DNA from: Mobula birostris
Taxonomy: Eukaryota
Assembly (NCBI RefSeq): GCF_030028105.1
Contig: NC_092384.1
Coordinates: forward strand, 17,429,629 to 17,493,628
Length of the DNA stretch: 64,000 nt
Direction of reading: 5' to 3'
The translations under genes were made by a program, and so were the position numbers. This document shows positions 1 through 64,000 of this stretch, in pieces. The notes below the pieces were generated by a model, which was given only the letters and a program-made list of their open reading frames with translations, made no database searches and was not told the origin of the DNA. Numbering within the stretch: the first letter of the stretch is position 1; each line of letters starts with the position of its first letter.

Positions 1-894
1 CAAAATGAAATACAGTCAGTTTGGGAGACGGATGAAAGAGTTCAGAGAATACACCTCGACGGCGAAGCTTAGAGGTCCGAAGTCAGGAGGACGTTCTCTT
101 TTGAATGGTATTTGAGCTTTAATGCACAGTTGGGTTTGCGCCGGGCGTTAGCTTTGAAAACCTGGGTACGTATGGATTTTTTTTTTCATTTCGTATCAAG
201 ACTGAGCTACAAAACCCAAAATATCACATATTTCTATAGTACGAATGCACATGGAGATAAATATTCTGGCAGCTCAACTGCTCAGGGAGTGTTGCAGATC
301 TTGCAGTTGAGCTCCATAGTCATAAACATCCAGTAATAGAGCTTTCCCCAGAATGTGAACCATTCCTCCAACAGTTCCCCGTGTTGAACGTGGCAAATCA
401 TTGCCTCGTGAAACAACCAGGAAGGCAAATGCAAATCGATATTAAGCGCATTGATTCTATAGATTTATCTTTCTAAAGCGTGAAGACCTGCAGAAAAATG
501 GTTGACAGTGAATTGGCACTGCTACAGGATTGCTTGTGGAAATAATACCTTGCATAGGGTCAAAAAGGAACTGAATAACTTCAATTTAACCATACTCAGA
601 GCTTACTAAAACTTGAGCCCAATTGTAAGGTTCTGTAAAACATGGACTTCTTCCGCTACAGCTTTAGTCGGTGTCTAACAGGGGAGATTTAGTAGTTCCT
701 CCTATACTTCTTCCTATAGATGCTGCCTGGCCTCTTGTGTTCCACCGGGATTTTGTTTGTTCTGCTTGAATTTCCAGCATCTGCAGATTTTCTCGTGCCT
801 GACATTTTACTAGTTCGATTGCTTTCTCTGTTTATCACAGCAGTTAGGATTTCGCTCTGTCTGCAGTAGCCACCCGGAGCTCACTGTTGCCCGA

Positions 895-2130
895 CTCCCC
901 GTAGATCTTCATGCCCTAACTAATCAAGAACCTATCAACTTCTGCTTTAAATATCCATAAAGACTTCGTTTCCATAGCTGCCTGCGGCAAAAAATTCCAT
1001 AGGTTTACCATTCTCTTTTTAAGGCCTTCCTCCTCATCTCCTCTATTCTGAAGCTGCAACCTCTGGTCTTAGACTTTCCTACCATAGGAACATCCTCTCC
1101 ACATCCACATTATCAAGTACTTTCACCTTTAAATAGGGTTCAATACAGTCGGCTCTTATTTTCTGAATTCCAGTGAAAACAGGCCAGAGCCATAAAAGAC
1201 TCTTCATTGGATTAGCTAATGAATTCTGGAATCATTGTGAAGAACCTCCTTTGAGCCCTCTCCAGTTTCGGCACATGCCTTCCAAGATAAGGGGCTTAAA
1301 ACTGCTCACAATACGCCGTGACACCTCACCAGTGCTTTATAAAGTCTTGATATTACATCATTGCTCTTATATTCCAGTCCTCTTGAAATTAATGCTATCA
1401 TTGCATTTGCTTTCCTGCCCACAGACTCAATCTGCAAATTAACCTGTATGGAATACTGCACACGGACTCCCAAGTCCCTTTGCACCTCAATGTTTTAGAT
1501 TTTCGTTCCAGTTAGAAAATAGTCAAACCTTTCATACCGTCCACCAAAGTGCATGACCACATACTTCTCGACACTGTATTCCATCCGCCATTTCATTGCC
1601 TATTCTCCTAGTCTGCATAAGTCCTTCTGTTGCCTCTCTATTTCCTAAAACCCACCTGCCTGTCCACCTATCTTCATATTGACTGCAGACTTTGCAACAA
1701 AGCCATCAATTCCATCATCCATATCACTGACACACAACCTTAAATGAATCAGTCACAACACAGATCCCTGTGGAACACCGTTCGTCACGGACAGCCAACC
1801 AGAAAATGCTTCCTTTATTCCCATTCTTTGTCCCTTACCAACCAGCCACTACTTTCTCCACCCTTGAATCTTTCCTGTGATACTTTGACCTTGTAGCTTG
1901 TTAAACAGCCTTTTGTGTGGTACGTTGTCAGAGGCCTTCTGAAAATCCAAGTACGCAACAATCGATTCTCCCTACCGTATCTGACCTGTTTTTCATTCCT
2001 TCAAATAATTCAATCAGATTTTTCTGGCGAGAGTTTCCCTTGAGGAAATCATGCTGATATGGCATGCTGTATTATACGTCTCAAAGTAACCTAAGACCTT
2101 ATCCTTAATAATGTACTCCAACATCTTGTC
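895..2130 (-). mobile_element. Degenerate CR1-clade LINE ORF2 (RT) fragment
   Basis: The reverse strand carries CR1 RT and 3'-end motifs (reverse of FADDTK, GGSVD, VLLQLY regions) with stops and frameshifts; boundaries approximate. Confidence 0.8.
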
Positions 2131-2152
2131 AACTGTACTCCAACATCTTGTC

Positions 2153-2700
2153 GCCTCAAATCTCCTACTTCCAGCCTCGCCTCGCCTCAACTCTACTGCC
2201 TCCAGCCTCCAGCATCGCCTCGCCTCAAGTCTCAAGTCTCCAGCCTCCTACCAAGCCTCGTCTCAAGTCTCCTGCCTCCAGCCCTCAGCCTCGCCCTGCC
2301 TCAAGTCTCCTGCCTCCAGCCTCCTGCCAAGTCTCACCTCAAGTCTCCAGCCTCCTGCCTCCTGCTAAGCCTCGCGTCAAGTCTCTTGCCTCTAGCCTCC
2401 AGCCTCGCCCTGCCTCAAGTCTCCTGCCTCCAGCCTCCTGCCAAGCCTCGCCTCAAGTCAAGTCTCTTGCCTCCAGCCTCCAGCCTTGCCTCGCCTCAAG
2501 TCTCAAGTCTCCAGCCTCCTGCCAAGCCTCGCCTCGTCTCTTGCCTAGCATCGAGCCTGAAGACTCCAGTCTCTAAGCTCTAGCTTCTTGCCAAGCCGAG
2601 ACAAGTCTCTAGCCTCTAGCTTCAAGCCTGAAGACTCCAGCCTCCTGCCTCCTGCCAAGCCTTGTCTCTAATCACTAGCCTCAAGTCTGCAGACTCCAGT
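2153..2700. repeat. Low-complexity tandem microrepeats inside the LTR (CCAGCCTC / GCCTCAAGTCT / GCCTCTA units)
   Basis: Directly visible reiterated 7-20 bp units; the same array recurs at about 3675-4075 and 45820-46260. Confidence 0.9.
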
Positions 2701-4306
2701 TGCATCCTGCCTGCCTGCCAAGCCTCGTACTTGCCTAGTTCTCGGGTCCGAGCCAGAGGCAAGACCCAGGTACTGGGTCCTTGTCCAGTCCCTGCCTCGG
2801 AGTCCAATTCGGGCTCCTAGCTCTCTTATTCAGTCCTGTTCCAGGTTCCTGGTTTTCCTGTCCATATTCTTGCCATCGCCCTGTATCCTAGTCCTGTTCC
2901 TGGTACTTCAGTGTCTGTGTCTTCAACTTGGGTCCATTCCCAGCCACCACCTGATGACAGAACGATCCAGCCAATCATGGACCCAGCGACACAGACACTG
3001 TCGTTTTCCTCTGGGCTCCCGGGGTTCCTTTCTGTTAATTACCCTCCCACCTGCCCGGGTCGTCCATAGTCTGGATACTCTGTTTGGTCAGCAGGATACT
3101 CCCGTAGAGAGGGGAGTACTGTCATGGTCTGGTCCGTGAAGTCCGTATTCCGGTTCACGGTCCGGTCTATCGACCCTTGCTCCAGGTTTTCCTGTTTACA
3201 CTGTGCCTGTTCTGGTTGAGCTCTAATTGACGCAGCTGATGCTGGTTGGGGCTGGCTGCATGAATACCTCCAGAGACCAGGGTGTGGCTGCTGGATTACT
3301 GCTGTCCTTACTCATTGTATCCCTTGCTCTGCCTTCTGTTTCCTGCCTTGTCTTGCCGGTAACTCTCGCCTCGCCTGAAGTTCTCGTCTCGCCTTGCTTT
3401 GCCAGAAGCCTTGCCTTGTCTTGCCGGTAACTCTCACCTCGTCTCGCCGGCAGTCTTGTCCTGGAGCCACCCTGTACCTAGCTCCCTTCCTGTCCCTTCC
3501 CTCCGCCCAGGTAAGCTAGGCCGCCTTGCCGTTACCTGGGGTTATTTCTGTCCCTTCATGTCCCTTGCGTCCGCCCAGGTAAGCGAGGCCGTCCTGCCGT
3601 TACCTGGGGTTGGTTCTGTCCCTTCCTGTCCCTTGCCTCTGTCGGGTGGTGATCCGCGCCCTGCCCAGGAGGAGCCAAGCCTCGCCTCAAGTCTCCAGCC
3701 ACCTGCCTCCTGCCAAGCCTCGCCTCAATTCTCCTGCCTCCAGTCTCCAGCCTCGCCTCGTCTCAAGTCACCTGCCTCCAGCCTCGCCTCGCCTCAAGTC
3801 CCAAGTCTCCAGCCTCCTGCCATGCCTCGCCTCGTCACTTGCCTAGCCTCGAGCCTGAAGACTCCAGCCTCTAGCCTCTAGCCTCTTGCCAAGCCAAGCC
3901 AAGTCACTAGCCTCTAGCTTCAAGCTTGAAGACTCCAGCCTCGAGCCTCTAGCCTCTTGCCAAGCCAAGCAAAGTCTCTAGCCTACAGTCTCCTGCCAAA
4001 CCAAGCCAAGTCTGTAGCCACTAGATTCAAGACTGAAGACTCCAGCCTCGTCCTGCCTGCCTGCCAAGCCTCGTCCTTGCCTAGTTCTGGGGTCAGAGCC
4101 AGAGGCAAGACCCAGGTACTGGGTCCTCGTCCAGTCTCTGTCTAGGAGTCCAAGCCCAGGCTCTTAACTCTTTTCTTCAGTCCTGTTCCAGGTTTCTGGT
4201 TTTCCTGTCCATGTCCTTGCCAACGCCCTGTATCCTCGTCCTGTCCCTGGTACTTCAGTGTCTGTGTCTTGCACTGGGGTCCATTCCCAGCCACCACCTT
4301 ATGACA
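2153..4306 (+). mobile_element. Non-autonomous TRIM-like LTR element: truncated LTR (2153-2959), 160-bp internal region, full LTR (3120-4306)
   Basis: Both LTR copies end CATTCCCAGCCACCACCT(G/T)ATGACA. The internal part starts GAACGATCCAGCCAATCATGGACCCAGCG (MDPA, typical Ty3/gypsy gag start) and ends with the purine tract AGAGAGGGGAGTAC immediately before TGTCA at 3120. Confidence 0.75.
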
Positions 4307-6862
4307 CATACATGGTAAATGATAGGGCATCGAAGAATGCTGTAGAACAGAGTGATCTAGGAATAATATGCATAGTTCGCTGAATGTGGAATTTCATGGG
4401 GAATCTCGAGAAAAGAATTGGTTGAGACAAATGTAGGTCCCCTACAGACAGAAATAGGTGAATTGATTATGGGGAGCAAGGACATGGCAGACCAATTGAA
4501 CAACTACTTTGGCTCTGTCTTCACTAAGGAGGACATAAATAATCTTCCAGAAATAGTAGGGGACAGAGGGTCCAGTGAGATGGAGGAACTGAGAGAAATA
4601 CACGTTAGTCGGGAAGTGGTGTTAGGTAAATTGAAGGGATTAAAGGCAGTTAAATCCCCAGGGCCAGATAGTCTGCATCCCAGAGTGCTTAAGGAAGTAG
4701 CCCAAGAAATTGTGGATGCATTAGTGATAATTTTTCAAAACTCTTTAGATTCTGGACTAGTTCCTGAGGATTGGAGGGTAGCTAATGTAAACCCCGTTTG
4801 AAAAAAGGAGAGAGAGAGAAACCGGGGAAATATAGACCGGTTAGCCTAACATCGATCGTGGGGGAAATGCTAGAGTCAGTTATCAAAGTTTTGATAACAA
4901 CATATTTGGAAAGCGGTGAAATCATCGGACAAAGTCAGTATGGATTAATGAAAGGAAAATCATGTCTGACGAATTTCATAGAAGGCTTTGAGGATGTAAC
5001 TAGCAGAGTGGATAGGAGAGAACCAATGGATGTGGTATATTTGGATTTTCAAAAGGCTTTTGACAAGGTCCCACACAGGAGATTAATGTGCAAACTTTAA
5101 ACTCACGGTATTGGGGGTAAGGTATTGATGTGGATAGAGAATTGGTTGGCAGACAGGAAGCAAAGAGTGTTCTGAAACGGGACCGTTTCAGAATGGCAGG
5201 CAGTGACTAGTGGGGTACCGCAAGGCACAGTGCTGGGATCCCAGCTGTTTACTATATATATTAATGACTTAGATGAGGGAATTAAATGCAGCATCTCCAC
5301 GTTTGCGTATGACGCGAAGCTGGGCGGCAGTGTTAGCTGTGAGGAGGATGCTAACAGGATGCAGGGTGACTTGGATAGGTTAGGTGAGTGGGCAAATTCA
5401 TGCCAGATGCAATTTAATGCGGATAAATGTGAGGGTATCCACTTCGGTGGCAAAAATAGGAAAACAGATTATTATCTGAATGGTGGCCGATTAGGTAAAG
5501 GCGAGTTGCAACGAGACCTGGGTGTCATTATACACCAGTCGTTGAAAGTGGGCATGCAGGTACAGCAGGCGGTGAAAAAGGTGAATGGTATGCTGCCATT
5601 CATAGCAAGAGAATTCGAGAACAGCAGCAAGGAGGTACTACTGCAGTTGTACAAGACCATGGTGAGACCACACCTGCAGTATTGTGTGCAGTTTTGGTCC
5701 CCTATCTGAGGAAAGACATCCTTGCCATAGAGGGAGTACAAAGATGGTTCACCAGATTGATTCCTGGGATGGCAGGACTTTCATATGATGCAAGACTGGA
5801 TCGACTAGGCTTATACTCGTTGGAATTTAGAAGATTGAGGGGGGGGGGATCTGATTGAAACGTATAAAATCCTAAAGGGATTGGACAGGCTAGATGCAGG
5901 AAGATTGTTCCCGATGTTGGGGAAGTCCAGAACGAGGGGTCACAGTTTGAGGATAAAGGGGAAGCCTTTTAGGACGGAGATTAGGGAAAACTTCTTCACA
6001 CAGAGAGTGGTGATTCTGTGGAATTCTTTGCCACAGGAAACAGTTGAGGCCAGTTCATTGGCTGGATTTAAGAGGGAGTTAGATGTGGCCCTTGTGGCTA
6101 AAGGGATCGGGGGTATGGAGGGAAGGCTGGTACAGGGTTCTGAGTTGGATGATCAGCCATGATCATACTGAATGGCGGTGCAGTCTCGGAAGGCCGAATG
6201 GCGTACTCCTGCACCTATTTTCTATGTTTCTATGATATAGCGGTGAAGAAAGCTTTTGGCATGCTGGCCTGTATTAATCGGAGCATTGAGGATAGGAGTT
6301 GGGATATAATGTTGAAATTGTATAAGGCATTGGTAAGGCCAAATTTGGAGTACTGTGTACAGTTCTGGTCACCGAATTATAGGAAAGATGTCAGAGACAG
6401 GACAGAGGAGGTTTACTAAGACGTTGCTTGCGTTTCATCTCATAAGTTACAGAGAAAGGTTGAACAAGTTAGGTCTTTATTTTTTGGAGCGTAGACGGTT
6501 AAGGGGGAACTTGATAGAGGTGTTTAAAATTATGAGGGGGATTGATAGAATTGACGTAGATAGGCTTCTTCCACTGAGAATGGGGCAGATTCAAACAAGA
6601 GGACATGAGTTGAGAGTTAAAGGACAAAAGTTTAGTGGTAACATGAGTGGCAACTTCTTTACTCAGAGAGTGTTAGCTGTGCGGAGCGAGCTTCCAGCAG
6701 AAGTGGTTGAGGCAGGTTTCACTGTTGTCGCTTAAAGTTTAATTGGATAGATAAATGGACAGGACAGGAATGAAGGATTACGGGCTGAGTGAAGGTCGGC
6801 GGGACTAGATGGGAGTAAGAGTTCGGCACGGACAAGAAGGGCCAAGATGGCCTGTTTCTGTG
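4307..6862 (+). mobile_element. Older CR1 3' fragment (4307-4387 and 6233-6862) interrupted by a second CR1 insertion
   Basis: The two pieces align consecutively with the CR1 copy at about 7985-8745; 3' tail ...GTGCTGTAATTGTTATATGGTTAT. Confidence 0.7.
4388..6232 (+). mobile_element. 5'-truncated CR1 LINE, ORF2 RT pseudogene with intact 3' UTR
   Basis: ORFs 4418-5709 contain KSPGPD, YRPVSLTS, DFQKAFDKVPH, SGVPQG and YCVQFWSP. The element ends GCCGAATGG..ACTCCTGCACCTATTTTCTATGTTTCTATG. Confidence 0.93.
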
Positions 6863-6865
6863 CTG

Positions 6866-8745
6866 TAATTGTTATATGGTTATAAGATACGAGGCTGTTT
6901 TGGAAAGTAAGGTGAAAATAAATCCAAAGGGTTTCTACAGTTACATTAATAGCAAAAGGATAGTGAGGGATAAAATTGGTCCCTTGGAGAATCAGAGTAG
7001 ACAGCTACGTGCAGAACAAAAAGAGATGGGGGAGATTTTGAACAAATTCTTTTCTTCGGTATTCACTCAGGAGAAGTATATTGAATTGTGTAAGGTAAGG
7101 GAAACAGGTAGGGAAGTTATGGAAACTATTTTGATTAAAGAACAGTAAGTGTTGGAGCGTTGAATGAATATAAATGTGGACAATTCTCCGAATCCTGACA
7201 GGATAATCCCTAGGACCTTGAGGGAAGTTAGTGCAGAAATAACAGGGGCTGACGGAAATATTTCAACTGTCATTAGTCACGGGGTTAACGCCGTAGGGAT
7301 GGCGTAGTGCTCATGTTGTTCCATTGTTTGGAGAGGGTTCTCAGAGTAATTACCGGCCTGTAAGTGTGACGTCAATGTTGGGCAAATTGATGGAAAGTAT
7401 TCTTAGAGATGATATATACAATTATCTGGATAGACAGGGTCTGATTAGGAATAGTCTACATGGATTTGTGTGGAAGGTCCTGTTTGAAGAATCAGATTGA
7501 ATTTTTTGAAGACGTTATTAGGAAAGTTTACGAGGGCAAAGCAGTGGATGTTGTCTATATGGACTTCAGTAAGGCCTTAGACAAGGTTCCACACGGATGG
7601 TTAGTTAGGAAGGTTCAATCGTTAGATATTAATATTGAAATAGTAAAATGGATTCAACAGTGGCTGGATGGGAGACGCCAGAGAATAGTGGTGGATAATT
7701 GTTTGTCAGGTTGGAGTCCAGTGACTAATGGTGTGCCTCAGGGATCTGTATTTGGTCCAATGTTGTTTGCCATATACATTAATGATCTGGATGATGGGGT
7801 GGTAAATTGCATCAGTAAGTATGCAGATGATACTAAGATAGGTGGCCTTGTGGATAATGAAGTAGGCTTTCAAAGTTTGTAGAGAGATTTAGGCCAGTTA
7901 GAAGAGTGGGCTGAAAGATGTCAAATGCAGATTAATGCTGGTAAGTGTGAGGTGCTACAGTTTTGTAGGACTAATCAAAATATGAGATACATGGTAAATG
8001 GGAGGGTATTGAAGAAAGCAGTAGAACAGAGGGATCAAGGAATAATGGTGCATAGTTCCCTGAAGGTAGAATCTCATGTGGCTAGGTTGGTGAAGAGTGC
8101 TTTTGGTATGCTGGCCTTTATAAATCAGAGCATTGAGTGTAGAAGTTGGGATGTAATGTTAATATTGTACAAGGAATTGGTAAGGCCAAATTTGGAGTAT
8201 TGTGTACAGTTCTGGTCATCGAATTACAGGAAAGATGTCAGCAAAATGGAGAGGCTACCAGAGAAAATTTACTAGAATGTTACCTGGGTTTCAGCACCTA
8301 AGTTACAGAGAAAGGTTGAACACGTTGGGTCGTTATTCTCTGGAGCGTAGACGGTTGAGGGGGGACTTGATAGAGGTATTTAAAATTATGAGGGGGATCG
8401 ATAGAGTTGACGTGGATAGGCTTTTTCCATTGAGAGTAGGGGAGAGTCAAACAAGAGGACATTAGTTGAGAATTGCGGGCAAAAGTTTAGGGCTAGCACG
8501 AGGGGGAACCTCTTTACTCTGAGAGTAGTAGCTGTGTGGAACGAGCTTCCAGTAGAAGTAGTAGAGACAGGCTCGATATTGTCATTTGAAGTAAAATAGA
8601 CAGCTATATGAACAGGAAAGGAATGGAGGGTTATGGGCCGCGTGCAGGTCGGTGGGACTAGGTGAGAGAAAGCATTCGGCACGGACTAGAAGGGCCCAGT
8701 TGGCCTCCTTCCGTGCTGTAACTGTTATATGGTTATATGCTTATA
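6866..8745 (+). mobile_element. 5'-truncated CR1 LINE ORF2 RT pseudogene (second subfamily)
   Basis: ORFs 6876-8465 contain DFSKALDKVPH, GVPQGS, YADDTK and YCVQFWS; tail GTTATATGGTTATATG. Confidence 0.93.
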
Positions 8746-8769
8746 TAGATTAGATTATTTTTCCCATGA

Positions 8770-9000
8770 TTCGTAAGAGAATGAGCGAACATTTGACAGA
8801 GGTATACAAAATTATGAGGGTGGCAAATATGCTGCATGAAAGCCTGCTTCATCCACTGAGGTTTGGTAAGAATGCAATTGGAAATCAGAGTTTAAGAGTG
8901 ACTGAGAAGCATTAAAGACAAACCTGAGGAGAAACGTCTGTATTCAGGCGGTAATGCTACTGTGGAATTAGCTGCCAGCGGAGGTGTTGAGAGTGGGTTT
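8770..9000 (+). mobile_element. Ancient CR1 3' remnant
   Basis: Weak similarity to the CR1 end (GAGGTATACAAAATTATGAGGG ... CTGTGGAATT). Confidence 0.5.
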
Positions 9001-9779
9001 GCGCCCGTCTGTCTACCGTTTACTATCTAACTCCATCAAAATTCACCTTCATCTCGAGAGGTGTATATTTCTCCCCATTTTGTATGGAGAAAGAAATGTG
9101 GATTTTGCTAATCCTGCATGAAAAAAGTTGGAATGACAATTTTCAGTGCCTGCGACAATTTGTTGCTTGATGTTGGAATTAAGTTTTTTGGAGCTGGGTA
9201 TTATTCCTTTCTACTGGTTGATACGGAAATGGAGCATTGTGCTGCGGCATACAGACTCTTTGATAGAGATGTATATGTTTTCATATTTTTGGCGTCTGTG
9301 ATGACGAATCGAGTTATCCAACTCCAGCCATTCACATTATTATCCGTATTATTTCAACTTCTTGCATGCAAAACAATCCTAACATTACTTGGCAAGTAAT
9401 TCGTTGTATTCAAAGTACCTTCGCGCGATAATAAGGGTAAAATCCAAAGGTATCATAAACCTTGGACATTAGGTTTAACTGGGAGATAGCTCATGAACAG
9501 GGTTGGACGAACAGCAGCGGGAAAGAGTCCGGGGAAGTGCGATACGATAAACAGAAGTAACTCTATTATGCGCCTAATAGATTCTACATGAAAAGTAATT
9601 AATTCTTCTGTTCATTAAAATTCTGAATTTAGAATATCAGGACTGGGGTGTATTTAAACGCGGAAAACAAATGTATTGTCGCCTCTTGCTTTATCAAGTA
9701 GAAACATTTCGTTTTATCCTCATCACTAAGTTTTATGTAAAATGCTCAGGGCTGAAAATCTCCAAACAGTCACACTCAC

Positions 9780-10085
9780 CGAACACAGTGATCTTGGTGC
9801 CACTTCCATTCCCGAAAGAGTGCCCCTGGTAGTTTGCTTCACAGTAATACAGTCCGGAGTCGGCGACTTTGGCATTCCACAGTGCAAGTTCTTCCCTTCC
9901 CCTTCCTAGCATAAAATGTCTTCTGCTGTCGCTTTTTAAAAATGCCTTCTCGCCTTCCCTCCACCAACGAACGTCAACAGTATCTTGAGATAGTGGAAAT
10001 TTGCATAACATAGTAACATTCGTACCAGCCGGGACGTTCAGCTCCCTAGGTAATTGAGATACTTCGCTCACAGTTACTTTGACGG
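9780..10085 (-). CDS. Internal exon encoding a VJ-type immunoglobulin V domain (NKp30/NCR3-like family)
   Basis: 306-nt phase 1-1 exon with acceptor cttattttctggcag and donor G|gtgagt. It encodes VKVTVSEVSQLPRELNVPAGTNVTMLCKFPLSQDTVDVRWWREGEKAFLKSDSRRHFMLGRGREELALWNAKVADSGLYYCEANYQGHSFGNGSGTKITVF, with B-strand Cys, C-strand Trp, DSGLYYC and J-like GxGT. Family assignment is from recalled motif similarity, not a search. Confidence 0.92.
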
Positions 10086-11231
10086 CTGCCAGAAAATAAG
10101 CAAGAGTATTAATAACAATCAGATACAGTGAATTTTTAAAAAAACGTAAGACGTAAGTCACTGGACATCTAAGAACCAAAGGCAACCGAATAGCTGAAAC
10201 ACTGCAACCAAATATGTTGCTGGCACCTAGTGTTTAATGTTCTAAAATATAATGTTCAGTTCGGAAACGGCATATATAAATCAGCATACTCAGCCAAGTA
10301 GTAGCTAGAAGTGCCATGTACCAAACCGTAAATTTTCCCGACATCTTACAAAAACCGAATCAACCAATTCCTGCAAGGCAAGTGGTAATTTAAAGAGTTT
10401 TCTGGAGGAAAAGGTCTTCGTGAGGAAATTGTTTGATCATGTTAACATGACGTAGGATGACGCCTCCGCAAGTCAGAATAATGTGGTTTAGATTTAAACT
10501 CTGCCTGGGTTGGGAGGAAATTAAGAACTCTTGCCATTCTATGTCTTTTTATATGGCCTACCCAGTGCTTTCGTGATTATGCTGGAAATTTTGCCCTCTC
10601 GCTGAATTCAGGAATTATCCAAATCTTTATTGAGATATATATTCAAATCCGTACTCTGCGCATTTTGATGGTAAGGATGGAAAATCCGCTTAGGAGTTGG
10701 AAAAATGTCCAATAATATATACGGACAAAAAAAATAACAACGTTTATTCACTCCAATTTATATTTACAGCTTTGCTCCATTTCAATCATCTACCTTTGGT
10801 CAAATAGTACCCTGCTCGTTTCTCTACAAAAGCAATTGCGCCATACGTCCAAAAGGCTTTAAGCCGCGACGCGTAGGGACGGTGTTACATAAATGAAAAT
10901 TTGTTTCTCTTGATAATTTATTTTAGGGTTTGGTTATAACGGTTCGACTAATGAACTACTGCTTAACGTTTGAATAGCAAAACAAAAAGGAAATTATGAA
11001 CGAAACTGGTTAGAACGACAAGTATGTTCCCTCGGACGTCGTCACGGATCCGGCACAATGTATGATGTTGGATTCTGAGTATTGATGCCTATTACTTCAG
11101 CAATTTTCATGTAATTTTAATGCTTAAGTTTCATGAAACAAAAACATATAATGTGAAAACTTCACAAATTTATTTCAGTGACAGATTTCAGGCTGTGGTT
11201 TTTTTTTCAAAGTATGCCCCAGGTTCCTCAC

Positions 11232-11272
11232 TCGCTGCTGTGACCACAGCGAAAAGCAGCAGCAAATACTGT
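11232..11272 (-). CDS. Signal-peptide exon of the V-domain gene
   Basis: Acceptor aatctatttctatcgcag and donor A|gtgagg. The 41-nt phase 2-1 exon reads QYLLLLFAVVTAA and joins the V exon in frame. Confidence 0.7.
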
Positions 11273-13816
11273 CTGCGATAGAAATAGATTTAGGGTATTG
11301 GATGTTGATCACATAAAGAGAGAGCTTAGAGTTCAAACAGCAAGTTATTCAGTTTAATAATGACAGAGATTCAAGAGGGACTGCGATAAAATCTATAAAG
11401 GACGCATCGAGGAAGCCTCAGATGATTGATTGCAGTTCCGGGGCTCCATTTTAAATCCAATAAGCACGAGCAGTTGCGTTGCGGGAAATGCTGCTATTTT
11501 AAATATCTCCTACATTTCCACAAAGTAAAGGGGAGGCAATAGGATAGTTCATCGAGCAAAAAAAAAATAACACGTTAGCAAAAAATGGGTAAGCACGCAC
11601 CCATGTGTCTAACCTGATAGGGCATAAATTGTTATTCATTTATAAAATGACAGCATTGAATATCTCAAAAGCAACTTGGTTGGCGATGAAACTATACTGA
11701 GCTCCCATGGGCTTGCTACGAACGGAGTTAAGATTCTTATTACCATGTCAAACGCCTCGACATTTTGAGCAGTTATATTTCCGAATTGCCACGAAGCAAT
11801 GGGGATATTATGCTGCTTTCACAGAAGTTTGACAGCATTCTTAAATTTTATCTCCTGTCCTCTTAGATCTGAAATTATGTAGCTGTTTGGAACGTAAAGG
11901 TGTTCACTGGTAAAACATATTTTGTCTGTTGGATCTCACGGGATGTAATTGATGTCTGTTTGTTGAGGAGTTAGAGGAAATGGACATTGTGAACCTTATC
12001 CTACTGTGCATCTGGATGAATTTTAAGTGACTAGTCTAATAACAGATAACTTAGGTTTACGTTACAGGTAATTTGTAATGCCGAATACAAAAAAAAAAGT
12101 GTCTGCGGCAGAAAACACGATTTCTAGGAGGTAAGTTTTCCGTCGAGATTTCTGCCTTGATCTTTAGATACTCCTTTTTCTAGACGGATAAATCCTAATG
12201 ATGAATGTACTGTAATTACTTCCCCATGATCCATTCTCTATTTTCTATTGGTCGATTCTTCATGGTGTGTGAGAATGGAGCAGTCACTTGGACCGATTAC
12301 TGAGCACTTAAAAACAAGTTGGCTGATAAAAATTCCCCTCGTTTGGGTACGGTTGGGATTGTCCTGGTAGCTCTTAGGTAACAATTGAATAAGACTGCCG
12401 ATGCATTTTTAATCTCAAATGCTTCAGAGATAAGCCCTACATCTCTATGCTGTATTTTCACCAGCATAAATTTGTTAACTGGGGCGGAAAAGCACAGGAA
12501 AGTATAAGACACATTAGAAAGAAAGAAAACCGGGTGCCCATTCCACACACTCACCACTCCCTGTGTAAAAAACGTACCTCTGACCGACTTCGAAGTACTT
12601 TAAAAATGTGCCTTCTCGTGCTTGGCATTTCCGCCTTGGCATAAACCTTTTGTTCTTATATTTTTTAGCATTTAATTTATTTTATTTTATTTCAAATGCT
12701 TGAATACATGACAATCTCAGAAAAATCAAGATGTTTTTAAATGCTAAGCATAGCTCTGGTTAGGCCAAAGCATTGACTGCAAATCTAGCTTTCTAATTTG
12801 TGGAAAATGTTATGCCCCGGACGAGATAATCATTTATAATATCGCACCTTTAAATGCCTCTGCTTTCATTGCAAACTTATTCCGAAATGTTTTCAACAAA
12901 GTTCTTTTTGGATAAATATTTCAATTGCATGTTCATTATTCTTTAATGGCTAATAGGGAGCTCAATTGGAGTTAGTTGAACGCAAAATTAAAGCTACTGT
13001 TTGCTACAACTGACAGACCAAGGAAACACTCAGCAAGCCACGCAGCATCTGCCGAGAGAAATAGTGTGAACAATTCAAGTTGGTAATTTTTTACTAGTTC
13101 ATGAAGAGAAATGATTTGTATTTCCCCCTTTCTAAGAAGGTTCTCGATGTCTTCTGCTTAATTTTGGATTGCAAACATCTTTAATGCTGTTTTCCATTAA
13201 TTACTCTGCGTTACAATTAATGATCTAACGATATGAGCCAAATACAAAGCGAGATGACTTTACTTCTCCTTTCATTCGAGTCTTTAAAAGTATCGTTGAA
13301 AGCTTTAGAAAATGCAGCTCTCGACATTGGAACTTCATGTAATGTTGTCCACCTGTTCCTGTTCATTTGACGCTGTTTTTAATATAACAATGGACGAGTA
13401 CAGCACAGGAACGTGATCTTCGGCGAAGCTGCCTGTCGCAAACACGATGTGAAATTAAACTGAATCTCTACTAGCTGCGGTCCCTCATTTAAGTAATTAG
13501 ACAGGAGAAAGTTTTTCCCCTAAGATCTGTTTACAATATCATTTAATCTGCAAGTAATTGGTTCTCCATTCAATGCTCTTAGAGAATGACTCACACATAA
13601 ATATCAGCTATTTTACTGTTTTTAACAAATGTTTCGTATATTTATTTCCAGTGTGAACATAGCACAGAAACAGGAAGTATAGACGTTGCAGCATATTTTC
13701 GAAACATCTCGCTGACAGAAGCGAGATATCAAATATGTTGCTTAAATTAAACTTATGGACCTACGCTTAAAAGTCAAGTGTGATAACACGAGCTCTCTGG
13801 AACATGTAGGTTTTAC

Positions 13817-13848
13817 AGAAAAGAAACCTTTGACCACAGATTTTCCAT
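13817..13848 (-). CDS. Candidate first coding exon of the V-domain gene (MENLWSKVSF)
   Basis: ATG in ATCATGG context; phase-2 donor CT|gtaaaa matches the phase of the leader exon; a homologous sequence precedes an ATG and strong donor at 28.7 kb. Confidence 0.5.
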
Positions 13849-23896: not shown

Positions 23897-23953
23897 TCAG
23901 CTTCTCGTCTTCTTTAAAGTACGTACATCTGCGTACGTTGCACATTCCTGTTT
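23897..23953 (-). CDS. Candidate terminal exon with an ITIM-like motif (KQECATYADVRTLKKTRS*)
   Basis: Acceptor ctgcatttattcag, phase 0, TYADV near the stop. This is a short sequence and a chance match is possible. Confidence 0.4.
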   Translation of the reverse strand, partial: KQECATYADVRTLKKTRS

Positions 23954-24496
23954 CTGAATAAATGCAGATGTATCTTTGATACTGAGAAGGTGCAGAGTTG
24001 CCGTGGCCAGCTTGTTAATCTTATAACTTGTGATCTGTGAAAGTAAATCATATTGACCATTAGTTCATCATCCTGCGGCTGCAGAGGCGCTCGAGTCTGT
24101 AAGAAAGTTGTCACTTGTATCTGTATCTCATTGATTTCCAGCGGCAGGCTGTAACCGCAATGTTTGTCGTTTAAAATAAGCTTTCTTTTTCTGATTTTCC
24201 ATTCGGGCTGAAATTACGTGCTACGGTTCATCTGTCGTGTACAGAACAATGGTCGTGCTCATTTTAACATTCAGCCTATCATGTGAACGTTAATGCAATC
24301 TGTTTGAGGGTGCAGTTGAATGCTAAGATCAAAGCAGTCGACGCTTTGAGATACTAATGTTGCAAATGATAATTTTATGGATCGCCTACCGTCAAATTGA
24401 CCTGCTATTTATGTGGGTTGTAGATTCAGCCTGGGTGTTTAATTGTAAAAAAAAAAGTGGGAAATAAAGTTCGATCAAAAAGCTGGCACGCCTTAC

Positions 24497-45155: not shown

Positions 45156-46483
45156 TGTCATACTCCGGTCTGTGAAGTCCATATTCCAGTTCACGGTCCG
45201 GTCCATCGACCCTTGCTGTAGCGATTTCCTATCTACCCTGTTTCTGTCCTTGTTGAGCTAATTGAGTCAGCTGATGCTAGTTGGGGCTGGCTGCATAAAT
45301 ACATGCAGAGACCGGGGCGTGGTTGCTGGATTATTCTTGTCCTTACTCCGCGGATCCCTTCCTCTGCCTTCGATTTCCTCACCTGAAGCCCTGCCAGTCT
45401 CGCGGGTTACTCTCGCCTCGCCTGAAGTTCTGTCTCGCCTTGCTTTGCCAGAAGCCCTGCCTTGTCTTGCCGGTAACTCTCACCTCACCTGAAGTTCTCG
45501 TCTTGCCTTGCTTTGCCAGTAGCCTTGTCGTGTCTTGCTGTCTGGTCCTGGAGCCACACTGTACCTAGCACCTTTCCTGTCCCTTGCCTCCGCCCATGTA
45601 AGCCAGGCCGTCTTGCCGTTACCTGGGGTTGGTTCTGTCCCTTCCTGTTCCTTGCCTCCGCCCAGTTAAGCCAGGCCGTCTTGCCGTTACCTGGGGTTGG
45701 TTCTGAACTTTCCTGTGCCTTGTCTCTGTCGGGTGGTTATCCGCGCCCTGCCCAGGAGTACCGCGCCCTACCCAGGAGTACCGCGCCCTGCCCAGGTGCT
45801 CCGCGCCCTGCCCAGGAGGAGCCAAGTCTCAAGTCTCCTGCCTCCAACCTCCAGCCTCGCCTCACCTCAGGTCTCCAGCCTCGCATCGCCTCAAGTCTCC
45901 AGCCTCGCTTCGCCTCAAGTCTCCAGCATCGCCTCTAGTCTGAAGTCTCCAGCCTCGCCTCTACTCTCAAGTGTCCAGCCTCGCCTCTAATCTCAAGTTT
46001 CCAGACTCGCCTCTAGTCTCAAGTCTCCAACCTCGCCTCTAGTCTCAAGTCTCCAGCCTCCTGCCAAGCCTCGCCTCGTCTCTTGCCTAGCCTTGAGCCT
46101 GAGGACTCCAGCATCTAGCCGCTAGCCTCTAGCCTCTTGCCAAGCCAAGCCAAGTCTCTAGCCTTTCGCCTCTAGCCTGTCGCCTAGCCAAGTCTCTAGC
46201 CTCTAGCCTCAAGCTTCAAGCCTGTAGATTTCTGCCTCGTCCTGCCTGCCTCCCAAGCCTCGTCCTTGCCTAGTTCTGGGGTCCGAGTCAGAGGCAAGAC
46301 CGAAGTACTGTGTCCTTGTCCAGTCTCTGGCTCGGAGTCCAAGCCCGGCCTCCTAGCTCTCTTGTTCAATCCTGTTCCATGTTCCTGGTTTTCCTGTCCA
46401 TGTCCTGGCCATCGCCCTGTATCCTAGTCCGGTCCCTAGTACTTCAGTGTCTGTGACCGTTCACAGCCACCGCCCGTATGACA
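45156..46483 (+). mobile_element. Solo LTR of the 3120-4306 family with 5-bp TSD CCGTG
   Basis: TGTCA...TGACA termini; CCGTG at 45151-45155 and 46484-46488; colinear with 3120-4306. Confidence 0.9.
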
Positions 46484-48384: not shown

Positions 48385-51300
48385 CTAATCAGCTATGGTG
48401 TTATCAGTACCTTTGACATGTTTGATTTTTAAGTCACCTTCCTGCAATATCGGACTCCAATTTAACAACCTTCTATTCTTATCCCTCATTTTAGTTAGAA
48501 ACATCAACGGATTATAACCCATGTAAACCACAAGTGGTCTCTGAGCAACGGAAAGGTTTTGAGATCTCAGATCATAGGCCTCAAAAGGTTGTAAAGCCAG
48601 AATAAGTGCTAGTAATTCCTTTTCAAAAGTTGAATAATTCTTCTGGTGTACATTAAAGTTCTTTGAGAAATAAGCTACTGGGTGTTCAATGTCATCCATT
48701 CCCTTCTGTAACAGTACTGGCCCAGCAGATTCGTCACTAACACCTGTTGTTATAGAAAATGGCTTTAAAAAATCAGGTGCTTTGAGCATAGGATGATAAC
48801 ACACGACTGTTTCCAGACGTTTAAATGCCTCCTGGCAAAGTTCATTCCATTCAAATCATTCACTTTTCCCTAAGAGATTTGTTAGGGGGAGAGCGATGTC
48901 AGCAAGGTTCTTCAATAACTTTCTATAATACTCAATCATTCTTAAACCCCTTCTCAAAGCTTTCTTGTCGGTTAGAACAGGAACTTCAGCAATAGATTGA
49001 ACCCTGGCCAGTACAGGAGACAGCTGGCCTTGGCCCACCACATAACCTAATATGTAACTCTGGCATGGCAAATTCACTTGTAGCAAGGTTCGCAGTAAGA
49101 GTGGCCTTGGAAGGTCTGCCAAACCGTTTTTTGCAGCTGCAATATGCTCTTCCCACGTATCATTCCAGACCACTAAGTCATTGATATCAACCTCTGTGCT
49201 TTCTAACCCTCCAATCATAGAATTTATCATTCTCTGAAATGTTTCTGGAGTATTCTTCATCCCAAAGTGTAAAACATTGTATTCACACAGTCTAGACGGT
49301 GTCACAAATGCTGATATCTCTTTAAACCTCTCTGTTAAAGGAACACCCCGGTATCCTTTTAACAAGTCAATCTTAGTAAGATATTTAGCCTTCCCCACTC
49401 TATCAATGCAGTCATCCATTCTTTTTCTTTGGTCTTTCTTGTTTATAATTCCTTGTTCAACCCTTTTACTTTCCTTAAATTCACTTTGTGAAGATGCCAT
49501 TTCATAAGCTGGGCTAAATTCATAATGATGCCATGCACTGCACCTGTGCACCATTTCAAAACACAAATTAGTCCTTTTACTTTTTTTTCTGCTTTGGGTC
49601 CAACTGGTGGACCTTATCAGTAATATTTTCCAAAACAATAGAATTTTGATATCTGGATGAGTCTAGATTCAGTGAGTAAACATGCCTTTCCATTCAATTA
49701 TCAGATTTCACGATTCCATTTTGTCCTACAACAATTCTCCCAGCTGCAATTCCAGTAAACAAGTGTCTTATTTAGACTCGACCATTTTGTAAACCTTGCT
49801 TGGCAAAGTCACAATGCTTACTAAATCACATCCAGAGTTCTCTGAGTAGGGTCAAAGGTCCTTTTGGCCTGCAACTGAACACAGATTCCAACAGATTACC
49901 CTTCACTGCCTTCTGAATCGAATCCCCAACAATAAATAAAAGGAGGGGAACCCCCTCGTTCCCATTTTCCTCATTTCTCACACGATGATGTCCACCTAAA
50001 GGCATACTGTAAGCCATGTTTAAAATTTCAGCCTTGTAACCTTTCAAGACCACCACGTAACATGCAGGCACAGTGGCTAGTCTCCACTTCCTCATCAACA
50101 TCCCATCTTTAAGGTAATATGCTACAGATTCTCTCTGAATCTCCTCTCCTGTGAGAGCTATCTCTCTTAAAACCACCATTCCAGAATCTTGCTTCTGTTC
50201 CTCGATACATTCCTTTCTCAACAAAGACAAGCCTTTCTTATACACGTTACCCATATCAATTGTACTACCCTCTAAGTCCTGCTGAAACCTGGAAGGTAGC
50301 AAAGTCTGTGACACATCATTATAATTTAAACTCCTGGTTTTCCTATCATAGGTCTCAATAGCAACTTTGCTCATTAGCTGAATTGCTGAAACACTCTCAT
50401 CTTGGAGAGCTGTCTACATGCCTCCATTGTTTATTAAACTCAGTACCATCATCAGGATGATCAGAATCAAGAATACATTATGAAAGAGACCAAGTAAACT
50501 ACCCATCTGATTACGACCTATACTTTGACTTGTATCCACAGCAACTTCCACTCCAAAACCACAACAATTCTCCTTTTCCTCCTCCATAGCATCACCCTGA
50601 ATAACAGCACGACGTTGCAGGTGCTTAAATGTCCAAACAAAATCCAACAGAGCGGCACAGCAACTCTCAGCAGGCCTTTGTCCTACAAGAAGGGAAAAAC
50701 GGTCGCGCAACCAATCCAACCTTTTACAGCACTTTATCCAAAAGTCCAGGAACAGCGTTTTTCCCATTACTTCCAGCAACAATGACCTCACCAGCTTTTA
50801 AATCACGGTCTACTACAAATGATTGAGAATCCCCACATTCCACTGCTACAAAGGTTAAACCCTTACTCACTGAACCAAATCCATCTGACACAAAAGGACT
50901 ACATTTCCTTACAACCAAGTAAGAAACCTCAGACCTCAACTGAGCCTCAACATAAGGATCAGAATCCTGTGAACTCACAGGTACTACAACAACCTTGGCA
51001 GATTCCAGCGGAACAACTGCCTCTTCTGGGGTGCCATCACTTGTCCCAGTTTCATATTCAAGGTCATCTCGAACCTCCCAACTATTCTCTTGCCAACTGC
51101 TTTCTGCAGTAAACTCAACCTCATGGGTTGAAACTTCTTCGTCTATTTTCTTAACAAGCCCCTTCAGGGTAGGGGCATCCTCTGCCACTGGACATGCCCT
51201 TACCTCATCAGGAACACAACCTTTGAATTCATCACACAAAACTAGCCCTTCCGAGCTGTAAAAATCATCAGGGCCCGACACTGAACCTCTTTGCTGCAAC

Positions 51301-51770
51301 CTTTCCCTTTTAAACTGTCTCTGCCTTTCTGTCACGTGATCTTCACGTTGCCATTTCTCTCTCTCGAGCTGTCTCTGTCTTTCTGCCTCTTCTCTCTGTT
51401 TTGCTGCCTTTTCTCTCTGTCTTGCTGCTTCTTCTCTCCGTTTCTCTGCCTCTCTGGCCTCCCTCTAGAGCTGTTTTAATTTCCATTCATGCTGCCTGTT
51501 CAATATTTCCAACAGAAGCTGTTCTCCTCCTCAGTAGGTTCACCTTCCACGGTCAACTCTGACTCCTGCTCATCAAATGTTCTCTATCTATATAATATTC
51601 AACTATTTTTTCTTTGAATACCTACCTTAGTCACACCCTTCTTTACATCAATTGTCAATTTTTTAGCAATGTCCCGCAACTCATACGTTTTAGCTGACTT
51701 CAAAGTCACCAGGTCTGGTGATTTCAGAAAGTCTCTACCTTGCATTTTTACTGTCTTTCCACAAAACCGA
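48385..51770 (-). pseudogene. gag-pol remnant, copy A (gag, protease, integrase Zn part, RT, RNase H)
   Basis: GCVPDEVRA (gag); YKAEILNMAYSMPLGGH (integrase N-terminus); RMDDCIDRVGKAKYLTKIDLLKGY (RT); HPVAYFSK..STFEKELLALILAL (RNase H). Confidence 0.88.
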
Positions 51771-52146
51771 ACCAAAAGTTTGTTTATGTGGAGAAACTCC
51801 CCGCCAGTCAACCCCTTCTTAACTGTTGGAATACCAATTTGGGTCGATCCGCCTGATCCATCCTCCAAAACGCACTTTCTCTGCGGGCACAACAATGCTC
51901 ATTCAGTGTCCAGATCATGAGTCTGAGGTCTGTATCATCTGACGTCCTATTTATCTCACCAGGCTGAGCGCCACCTGTCACTCAAAGAGTCCCTCCTTCC
52001 TTTGTCTGTTAAGGAAATGCACAAGCAAGCAACAAGTCCTTGAAGAAATATCAACAACCTGCTGAAAATCATAACATCGAGTGTCCATTAAATAAAACCG
52101 TCTTCGGTCACCATAGGAACTTACGAGCTGCTCGGTGCTGTCCTTC

Positions 52147-63800: not shown

Positions 63801-64000
63801 CTATTTCATAAGCACGCTGATCTCTCTGCTTTACCAGATAATAGCTAATGCACTCTTCCTGCTATCGATCTTTGCGAAATGCTTTGCTCTCCCTCTGGTT
63901 TAGTGAAGCAAAGGCAGTGGTGTGCTCAAACGGGGCTTGTTCAACCTTTTGGAAAATTATATTTAATATAGCTAACTGATAGAGAGGTCAGCGATCATAC

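What the first reader, a model, noticed from the sequence alone, without database searches (positions are those of the whole stretch)
9780..13848. Phase-consistent three-exon model for a germline VJ-type Ig receptor gene (NKp30-like)
The exons join as MENLWSKVSFLQYLLLLFAVVTAAT-VKVTVSEVSQ...YYC...GNGSGTKITVF with compatible phases (2, 1, 1). V and J-like strands are in one exon with no RSS, as in NKp30/NCR3 and related non-rearranging VJ receptors considered close to the ancestral antigen receptor. Neither leader exon appears in the ORF track. It may be an uncharacterised member of an expanded chondrichthyan family.
Basis: partly seen in the sequence, partly recalled or inferred. Interest (0 to 1): 0.75.

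Follow-up and report, generated by a model that had tools for sequence, protein, structure and literature searches.

The report
Manta ray SIRP-like receptor gene front

Summary
The V exon is real. Window 10085-9780 (minus strand) is a phase-1/phase-1 exon for a V-set Ig domain with a germline-joined J-like strand (GNGSGTKITV) and no RSS.

The three-exon model is wrong. The true leader is one 55-nt exon at 10344-10290, 204 nt upstream and present in the ORF list. Leader plus V translate exactly to residues 1-120 of XP_072135230.1, a 346-aa "uncharacterized protein" of Mobula birostris.

The protein continues into a true C1-set domain, an uncharged membrane anchor and a 103-residue tail with four tyrosines, including an ITIM (LTYAAL) and an ITSM (TLYSDV). 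Those exons lie before the window start, after an intron of more than 11 kb.

That layout (VJ-C1-TM-ITIM/ITSM) is not NKp30, which has one domain, an arginine anchor and a short tail. The gene belongs to a multigene family found in sharks, rays and chimaeras, with inhibitory, short-tailed and arginine-anchored members. It is closest in design to SIRP-alpha/beta; databases name it inconsistently.

This scan has met the same family several times elsewhere in this genome. It is a new member of a known kind, of modest interest. Common descent with tetrapod SIRPs is unproven.

The parts
10290..10344 (-). True leader exon: ATG plus 18 codons (MSGKFTVWYMALLATTWL) plus the first base of a split codon; donor gtatgc, phase 1.
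   Evidence: Joined to the V exon it gives residues 1-120 of P0151/XP_072135230.1 exactly. The leader is conserved across the family. It is listed as ORF 10234-10344 minus.
10086..10289 (-). Leader-to-V intron, 204 nt (gtatgc...ctggcag).
9780..10085 (-). VJ exon: V-set Ig domain with the canonical Cys46, Trp59 and Tyr-x-Cys100, a short C'-D region, and a germline-joined J-like G strand (FGNGSGTKITVF). Phase 1 at both ends.
   Evidence: Pfam V-set E 4.9e-11. It is 100% identical to P0151 residues 20-120. No RSS. AlphaFold model pLDDT 89.
1..9779 (-). First 9.8 kb of the V-to-C1 intron, which runs at least 11.4 kb and leaves the window. It is filled with LINE reverse-transcriptase fragments and minisatellites. 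The C1, membrane-anchor and tail exons lie before the window start.
   Evidence: tblastn with P0151 residues 121-346 finds no matching exon here. RVT_1 hits at 5176-5706 and 7445-7879. The gene span of 18,540 bp puts the stop at about -8195, which coincides with scan note s1-145842.
13817..13848 (-).
   Evidence: It is absent from the annotated protein and from all relatives. It is one of 50 chance ATG-to-GT phase-2 candidates in the 4.1 kb upstream.
11232..11272 (-).
   Evidence: No homologue carries it. No in-frame ATG precedes it. Counted.

Best explanation
Window 10344-9780 (minus strand) holds exons 1 and 2 (leader and VJ domain) of the Mobula birostris gene for XP_072135230.1. This is a 346-residue type I membrane protein with the layout signal peptide, VJ-type V domain, one C1-set domain, uncharged membrane anchor, and a 103-residue tail.

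The tail has four tyrosines: TEYAPL, IIYSQT, LTYAAL (an ITIM) and TLYSDV (an ITSM).

Proposed mechanism, inferred from the motifs and from how SIRP-alpha and other ITIM/ITSM receptors work:
- The membrane-distal VJ domain binds a cell-surface or pathogen ligand.
- Src-family kinases then phosphorylate the tail tyrosines.
- The phosphorylated ITIM and ITSM recruit SH2-domain phosphatases (SHP-1/SHP-2 type), which damp activation of the leukocyte carrying the receptor.

Sister genes keep nearly the same ectodomain but have lost the tail or carry an arginine in the anchor. The family therefore works as a paired inhibitory/activating system of the SIRP-alpha/SIRP-beta kind.

Shown here: exon structure, identity to the annotated protein, domain types, motifs, and family distribution. 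Inferred: signalling, expression on leukocytes, ligand binding, and signal-peptide cleavage.
For: - Exons and identity: leader plus V equal residues 1-120 of P0151 exactly. The gene spans 18,540 bp on an 86.2-Mb chromosome of GCA_030028105.1.
- Domains: Pfam V-set and C1-set (E 6.9e-13) in P0151.
- C1 hallmarks as listed in PMC2785349 are all present: FYP at the B-C loop, C-x-V-x-H after the F-strand Cys, and exactly 13 residues between Cys142 and Trp156.
- Model: the ectodomain gives pLDDT 89 and two beta-sandwiches. Best fold matches are V-C1 chains: Ig light chains, TCR beta, PD-L1/B7-H6/B7-H3, TAPBPR, SIRP-alpha.
- Sequence matches in the PDB: Ig constant regions, UrIg2 (1.2e-14), SIRP-alpha (9.2e-13).
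- Anchor and tail: uncharged anchor ILACAVGGSAILALIIVLV, tail with ITIM LTYAAL and ITSM TLYSDV. LTYAxL is conserved from chimaera to manta.
- Paired design: paralogues with short tails, or with Arg in the anchor, interleave with inhibitory ones in the tree.
- Orthologue: the M. hypostoma protein is 96% identical overall and is named SIRP-alpha-like.
Against: - No transcript data could be examined here. Support for the model rests on the NCBI prediction and on conservation.
- No bona fide tetrapod SIRP sequence was available for a tree. Fold and sequence searches do not separate SIRP from Ig/TCR, B7/butyrophilin or tapasin-related V-C1 modules.
- The protein has one C1 domain where SIRPs have two.
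- The V domain has only 53 residues between its two cysteines, and the model shows almost no C' strand and no C'' strand. Single-sequence PDB hits are therefore led by I-set domains.
- Tyrosine motifs are short and can arise convergently.
- The language-model feature search with the tail alone gave only weak, generic adaptor-like hits.
Confidence: 0.85

Rival explanations
1. NKp30/NCR3-like single-V activating receptor with a two-exon leader.
For: The V and J-like parts are in one exon without an RSS. The GNG(S)GT motif recalls the J-like strand of NKp30; this comparison is from my own knowledge and was not tested. The phases of the proposed exons are compatible.
Against: The annotated, conserved protein uses another leader and continues into C1, an uncharged anchor and an ITIM/ITSM tail. 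No relative carries the proposed leader peptides. NKp30 is absent from the best PDB and Swiss-Prot matches.
Confidence: 0.03
2. A B7-H6/B7-family ligand rather than a receptor. Many paralogues are auto-named NCR3LG1-like or PD-L1-like, and the V-C1 ectodomain superposes best on B7, butyrophilin and SKINT models.
For: Swiss-Prot fold matches with the highest query TM-scores are SKINT8 0.80, TAPBPR 0.79, B7-H3 0.78, PD-L1 0.76 and B7-H6 0.74.
Against: The E-values of these matches are no better than those for Ig light chain, TCR beta or SIRP-alpha. The G strand carries a GxGTxLxV J-type bulge. The C domain has the full C1-set signature, which CD80 domain 2 lacks according to PMC2785349. The tail is a conserved multi-tyrosine ITIM/ITSM tail, and sister genes have Arg-bearing anchors, which is a receptor-type paired design.
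Confidence: 0.07
3. A relic or offshoot of the non-rearranging antigen-receptor lineage (UrIg/UrIg2-like), not related to SIRP.
For: UrIg2 V-C1-C2-C3 (PDB 9dmx) is among the best sequence matches of the whole protein (1.2e-14) and second for the C1 profile. UrIg genes also have a single VJ exon and a split leader (PMC12227049).
Against: UrIg and UrIg2 have three to eleven C domains, and no ITIM tail is described for them. Those PDB scores sum over several C1 domains, so the rank is inflated. All 34-40 close database relatives have the V-C1-TM layout.
Confidence: 0.05

Closest known systems
SIRP family (SIRP-alpha inhibitory, SIRP-beta activating; PTPNS1)
   Same: Non-rearranging V domain with a J-like strand, followed by true C1-set domain(s). 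The inhibitory member has an uncharged anchor and a multi-tyrosine ITIM-type tail. Sister genes have near-identical ectodomains but short tails or a basic residue in the anchor. Automatic annotation names the orthologue SIRP-alpha-like. SIRP-alpha appears among both sequence and fold matches (SIRP features from PMC2785349 and PMC12975943).
   Different: One C1 domain instead of two. The V domain is shorter (53 residues between the cysteines, no C'' strand in the model). No close relative outside cartilaginous fish was found. Orthology, synteny and any CD47-type ligand are untested.
NKp30 (NCR3)
   Same: A germline VJ-type domain in a single exon with no RSS.
   Different: NKp30 has no C domain, has an Arg in its anchor and has a short tail. 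This gene has a C1 domain, an uncharged anchor and an ITIM/ITSM tail.
UrIg / UrIg2 (non-rearranging elasmobranch antigen-receptor-like genes; PMC12227049)
   Same: A single-exon VJ domain followed by C1-type domain(s), restricted to cartilaginous fish. UrIg2 is a good PDB sequence match.
   Different: UrIg and UrIg2 carry many C domains and no inhibitory tail is described for them. This family has one C1 domain and a signalling tail.
Ig light chain / TCR chains
   Same: V-J-C1 order. These are the best Foldseek and phmmer matches over both domains.
   Different: The VJ domain is joined in the germline with no RSS. The protein has its own membrane anchor and an inhibitory tail.

Membership tests
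NKp30 / NCR3 | Ectodomain is a single V-type Ig domain (no C domain) followed by a stalk | tested here: not met
   The protein whose residues 1-120 are encoded here continues with a Pfam C1-set domain, E 6.9e-13.
NKp30 / NCR3 | Arginine in the membrane anchor for adaptor pairing, and a short cytoplasmic tail | tested here: not met
   The anchor ILACAVGGSAILALIIVLV is uncharged, and the tail is 103 residues with an ITIM and an ITSM.
NKp30 / NCR3 | VJ-type domain in one exon, not rearranged | tested here: met
NKp30 / NCR3 | MHC (class III) linkage and B7-H6 as ligand | not tested
   The window holds only transposon debris around the exons. No flanking marker genes could be read.
SIRP family | N-terminal V-set domain with a J-like G strand, germline-joined | tested here: met
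   Pfam V-set; GNGSGTKITV strand in the same exon; no RSS.
SIRP family | [quoted passage not shown] | tested here: inconclusive
   One domain meets all three C1 hallmarks, but there is one C1 domain, not two. A few family members have a duplicated C1, for example P0174.
SIRP family | Inhibitory member with cytoplasmic ITIM tyrosines that recruit SHP-1/SHP-2 | tested here: inconclusive
   The motifs are present and conserved (LTYAAL, TLYSDV, TEYAPL). Phosphatase binding cannot be tested with these tools.
SIRP family | Paired activating or short-tailed paralogues with similar ectodomains | tested here: met
   Anchor-Arg forms (P0165, P0169, P0067, P0199) and short-tail forms interleave with inhibitory forms.
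SIRP family | Common descent with tetrapod SIRP genes (phylogeny, synteny) | not tested
   No tetrapod SIRP sequence could be obtained through the tools. All database hits were from cartilaginous fish.
Rearranging antigen receptors (Ig/TCR) | V and J segments separated, flanked by RSS heptamer-spacer-nonamer signals | tested here: not met
   V and J are contiguous in one exon. The RSS scan of 9500-10600 found none; two CACTGTG heptamers inside the coding sequence have no nonamer.

The most novel reading that the evidence does not exclude
The family is the cartilaginous-fish branch (or sister) of the SIRP lineage. It would be a minimal VJ-C1 membrane receptor with ITIM signalling, present in the common ancestor of jawed vertebrates. 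It would be close in design to the non-rearranging V-C1 chain proposed as the forerunner of antigen receptors, and possibly co-evolving with the CD47-like Ig plus five-pass proteins that this scan noted elsewhere in the genome.
Probability: 0.25. Interest if true: 0.55.

Novelty: new member of a known kind. Interest (0 to 1): 0.3.

Why it matters
For this locus, the main value is a corrected gene model. The real leader lies 204 nt upstream of the VJ exon. The V exon is the front of an 18.5-kb gene whose C1, anchor and inhibitory-tail exons sit in the neighbouring window across a transposon-filled intron of more than 11 kb.

More broadly, the gene adds one well-defined inhibitory member, with a clear orthologue in Mobula hypostoma, to a large family of non-rearranging VJ-C1 receptors in sharks, rays and chimaeras. 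I found no paper describing this family in the searchable library. Public annotation scatters it under SIRP-alpha-like, B7-H6-like, TCR-beta-like, Ig-lambda-like, MHC II-like and tapasin-related names.

Such V-C1 receptors bear on how antigen-receptor chains looked before RAG-mediated rearrangement. This single gene does not settle that question.

Tried and rejected
- A scan for single-exon leaders using a strict hydrophobicity cut-off missed the true leader, which is only moderately hydrophobic. The homologue comparison found it.
- The PDB sequence search with the V domain alone was dominated by multi-domain I-set proteins or antibodies, because scores sum over domains. The searches with family profiles of V and of C1 had the same problem. 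They could not rank SIRP against NKp30 against B7.
- Foldseek against the PDB returned only Fab light chains. Swiss-Prot AlphaFold matches were spread evenly over Ig/TCR, B7/butyrophilin/SKINT, TAPBPR and SIRP. Fold alone does not assign a family.
- The language-model feature search (protein-atlas search) gave only generic results, both with the V domain and with the tail.
- Three word-indexed protein searches (whole protein, family profile, C1 region) returned only cartilaginous-fish proteins. Given the word filter, this does not show absence elsewhere, and it left me without tetrapod SIRP, NKp30 or B7-H6 sequences for a tree.
- The look-up of encoding contigs gave the gene span but no DNA, so I did not read the downstream exons directly.
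- Literature searches found UrIg/UrIg2, NKp30/B7H6 and CD28-family work in cartilaginous fish, but no description of this V-C1-ITIM family.
Full report
**The observation**

Reading the minus strand shows an open segment at window 10085-9780. It is flanked by a good acceptor (ttattttctggcag|CC) and a good donor (G|gtgagt), both in phase 1.

Its 101 codons carry the Ig hallmarks Cys...Trp...DSGLYYC and end in FGNGSGTKITVF. Pfam calls it V-set (E 4.9e-11, 108 of 109 profile positions).

The V part and the J-like strand are contiguous. A scan of 9500-10600 on both strands found no heptamer-spacer-nonamer recombination signal. The two CACTGTG heptamers inside the coding sequence have no nonamer.

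So the core observation, a germline-joined VJ exon, stands. No other V exon is present in the 64 kb.

**The exon model**

A full HMMER scan of 1.84 billion representative proteins with the V domain found a 346-residue protein that is 94% identical over the domain (P0009). Its cluster mate P0151 (XP_072135230.1, "uncharacterized protein", Mobula birostris) is identical over it.

In these proteins the V domain starts at residue 20, not 26, and is preceded by MSGKFTV(W/S)YMALLATTWLT. That peptide is encoded at window 10344-10290. It is an ATG in an A(-3) context, 18 codons plus one base, and a gtatgc donor, lying 204 nt upstream of the V exon.

Leader plus V exon translate to residues 1-120 of P0151 without a mismatch. 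The ORF list given to the first stage does contain this leader (10234-10344 minus).

The leader is conserved in paralogues and in orthologues from Mobula, Hypanus, Hemitrygon, Pristis, Narcine, Heterodontus and Scyliorhinus.

The second is one of two independent hydrophobic AG...GT mini-exons ending in phase 1 in the 4.1 kb upstream. Fifty ATG-to-GT first exons end in the phase needed to feed it. The phase consistency is therefore weak evidence, and the three-exon model is rejected.

**The rest of the gene**

P0151 continues after ...KITVF in this order:
- VPPTPLEIVP..., a Pfam C1-set domain (E 6.9e-13);
- an uncharged membrane anchor (ILACAVGGSAILALIIVLV);
- a 103-residue tail with tyrosines in TEYAPL, IIYSQT, LTYAAL (ITIM) and TLYSDV (ITSM).

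The C domain meets the three sequence criteria that PMC2785349 gives for true C1-set domains: FYP at the B-C loop, C-x-V-x-H after the F-strand cysteine, and 13 residues between Cys and Trp.

None of these exons is in the window. The recorded gene span is 18,540 bp. Counted from the ATG at 10344, the stop falls at about -8195. That is where the scan's neighbouring note on a "C1-set receptor with tandem ITIM and ITSM" ends.

The V-to-C1 intron is thus at least 11.4 kb. Inside the window it is made of LINE reverse-transcriptase fragments and minisatellites.

**Which family it belongs to**

Word-indexed searches with the whole protein, a 12-member family profile and the C1 region alone each returned 34-40 proteins, all from cartilaginous fish. 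They cover rays (Mobula, Hypanus, Hemitrygon, Pristis, Narcine), sharks (Heterodontus, Heptranchias, Scyliorhinus, Chiloscyllium, Hemiscyllium, Rhincodon, Cetorhinus, Carcharodon, Mustelus) and the chimaera Callorhinchus.

At least seven distinct members lie on the same 86.2-Mb manta chromosome.

Their automatic names are inconsistent: SIRP-alpha-like, NCR3LG1-like, PD-L1-like, TCR-beta-like, Ig-lambda-like, MHC class II-like, tapasin-related and "uncharacterized". This is what one expects of an uncurated V-C1 family.

A maximum-likelihood tree of 39 ectodomains shows the following:
- The window's protein pairs with its M. hypostoma orthologue (100/100).
- They sit inside a myliobatiform clade (100/100) where inhibitory, short-tailed and anchor-Arg members are interleaved.
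- There are two deep subfamilies.
- The ITIM LTYAxL is conserved from chimaera to manta.

**Comparison with named families**

The AlphaFold model of the ectodomain is confident (pLDDT 89, pTM 0.77). It shows two beta-sandwiches. The V domain has only a vestigial C' strand and no C'' strand, which explains why single-sequence PDB hits are led by I-set domains.

- Foldseek against the PDB gives only antibody light chains (E about 1e-14).
- Foldseek against the Swiss-Prot models gives matches at E about 1e-12 to 1e-11, with no clear winner. They include Ig kappa/lambda, PD-L1, TCR beta, B7-H6, TAPBPR, B7-H3, SKINT, SIRP-alpha and butyrophilins.
- phmmer against PDB sequences ranks Ig constant regions first, then UrIg2 (1.2e-14) and SIRP-alpha (9.2e-13).
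- NKp30 is in none of these lists.

By architecture and signalling design the nearest named system is SIRP-alpha/beta, as defined in PMC2785349 and PMC12975943:
- a VJ-type V domain;
- true C1 domain(s);
- an ITIM tail in the inhibitory member;
- near-identical partners with a basic anchor residue or no tail.

The differences are one C1 domain instead of two, a shorter V domain, and no demonstrated common descent. I could not obtain tetrapod SIRP, NKp30 or B7-H6 sequences through the tools, so no discriminating tree was built.

UrIg and UrIg2, the published non-rearranging elasmobranch antigen-receptor-like genes, share the single VJ exon. They differ in having three to eleven C domains, and no inhibitory tail is described for them (PMC12227049).

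**Mechanism**

Shown here:
- a secretory leader;
- an outward-facing VJ domain with three predicted N-glycan sites in the ectodomain;
- a C1 spacer, a neutral anchor and an ITIM plus ITSM tail.

Inferred from established ITIM/ITSM biology:
- Ligand engagement leads to tyrosine phosphorylation.
- Phosphorylation recruits SHP-type phosphatases, which inhibit the cell carrying the receptor.
- Tail-less and Arg-anchored paralogues supply the opposing or decoy arm.

The V domains diverge faster than the C1 domains among manta paralogues (53-75% against 72-87% identity to P0151). This fits V being the ligand-binding, diversifying part.

**Literature and earlier scan notes**

Five full-text searches found no description of this V-C1-ITIM family. 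The library is incomplete, so this is not proof.

The scan itself has met the family repeatedly in this genome. Other agents reached the same "SIRP-like" reading on other DNA, including a gene pair just beyond this window's end. I reached my reading before seeing those notes.

**Verdict**

The VJ exon is real. The leader model and the NKp30 assignment are wrong. The gene is an already predicted inhibitory member of a large, unstudied SIRP-like VJ-C1 receptor family of cartilaginous fish. It is a new member of a known kind, of modest interest.

Noticed in passing
window 63841-63942 (minus strand): A relic cytoplasmic-tail exon of a paralogue upstream on the same strand. It reads EQAPFEHTTAFASLNQRESKAFRKDR*QEECISY and is 59-68% identical to tail residues 268-301 of family members. 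It has an in-frame stop, and the membrane-proximal tyrosine is changed to Phe. The neighbouring gene has apparently lost its inhibitory tail.
   Followed up: partly
window 23909-24046 (minus strand): A decayed copy of the family's last coding exon (LLSQITSYKINKLATATLHLLSIKDTSAFIQKQECATYADVRTLKK). It is 30-42% identical to the terminal 46 residues of six family members (35-42% for the five with E 8e-5 to 7e-3). The ITIM tyrosine is lost (LTYAAL to LATATL) and ATYADV is kept. It is probably the orphaned terminal exon of the upstream paralogue, now about 40 kb from the exon at 63.9 kb.
   Followed up: partly
window 48388-54930 (minus strand): Retroelement remains. There is an RVT_1 match at 48859-49662 and RNase H matches at 48388-48855. 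A 246-403-residue acidic ORF occurs in two partly repeated copies (50727-51464 and 53254-54462), preceded by a Glu/Arg-rich coiled-coil-like stretch. This ORF has no Pfam match.
   Followed up: partly
window 2000-4400 and 45477-45935: Proline/serine/leucine-rich minisatellite-like repeats give long spurious ORFs on both strands. One block lies inside the V-to-C1 intron.
   Followed up: no
protein P0173 (Mobula birostris paralogue), C-terminus: The annotated C-terminus ...GNVSQWKVTWFGE resembles the J strand plus intron read-through of a V exon (GNGSGTKITVFGE at window 9813-9775). That gene model may end in a V-exon relic or be mis-joined.
   Followed up: no
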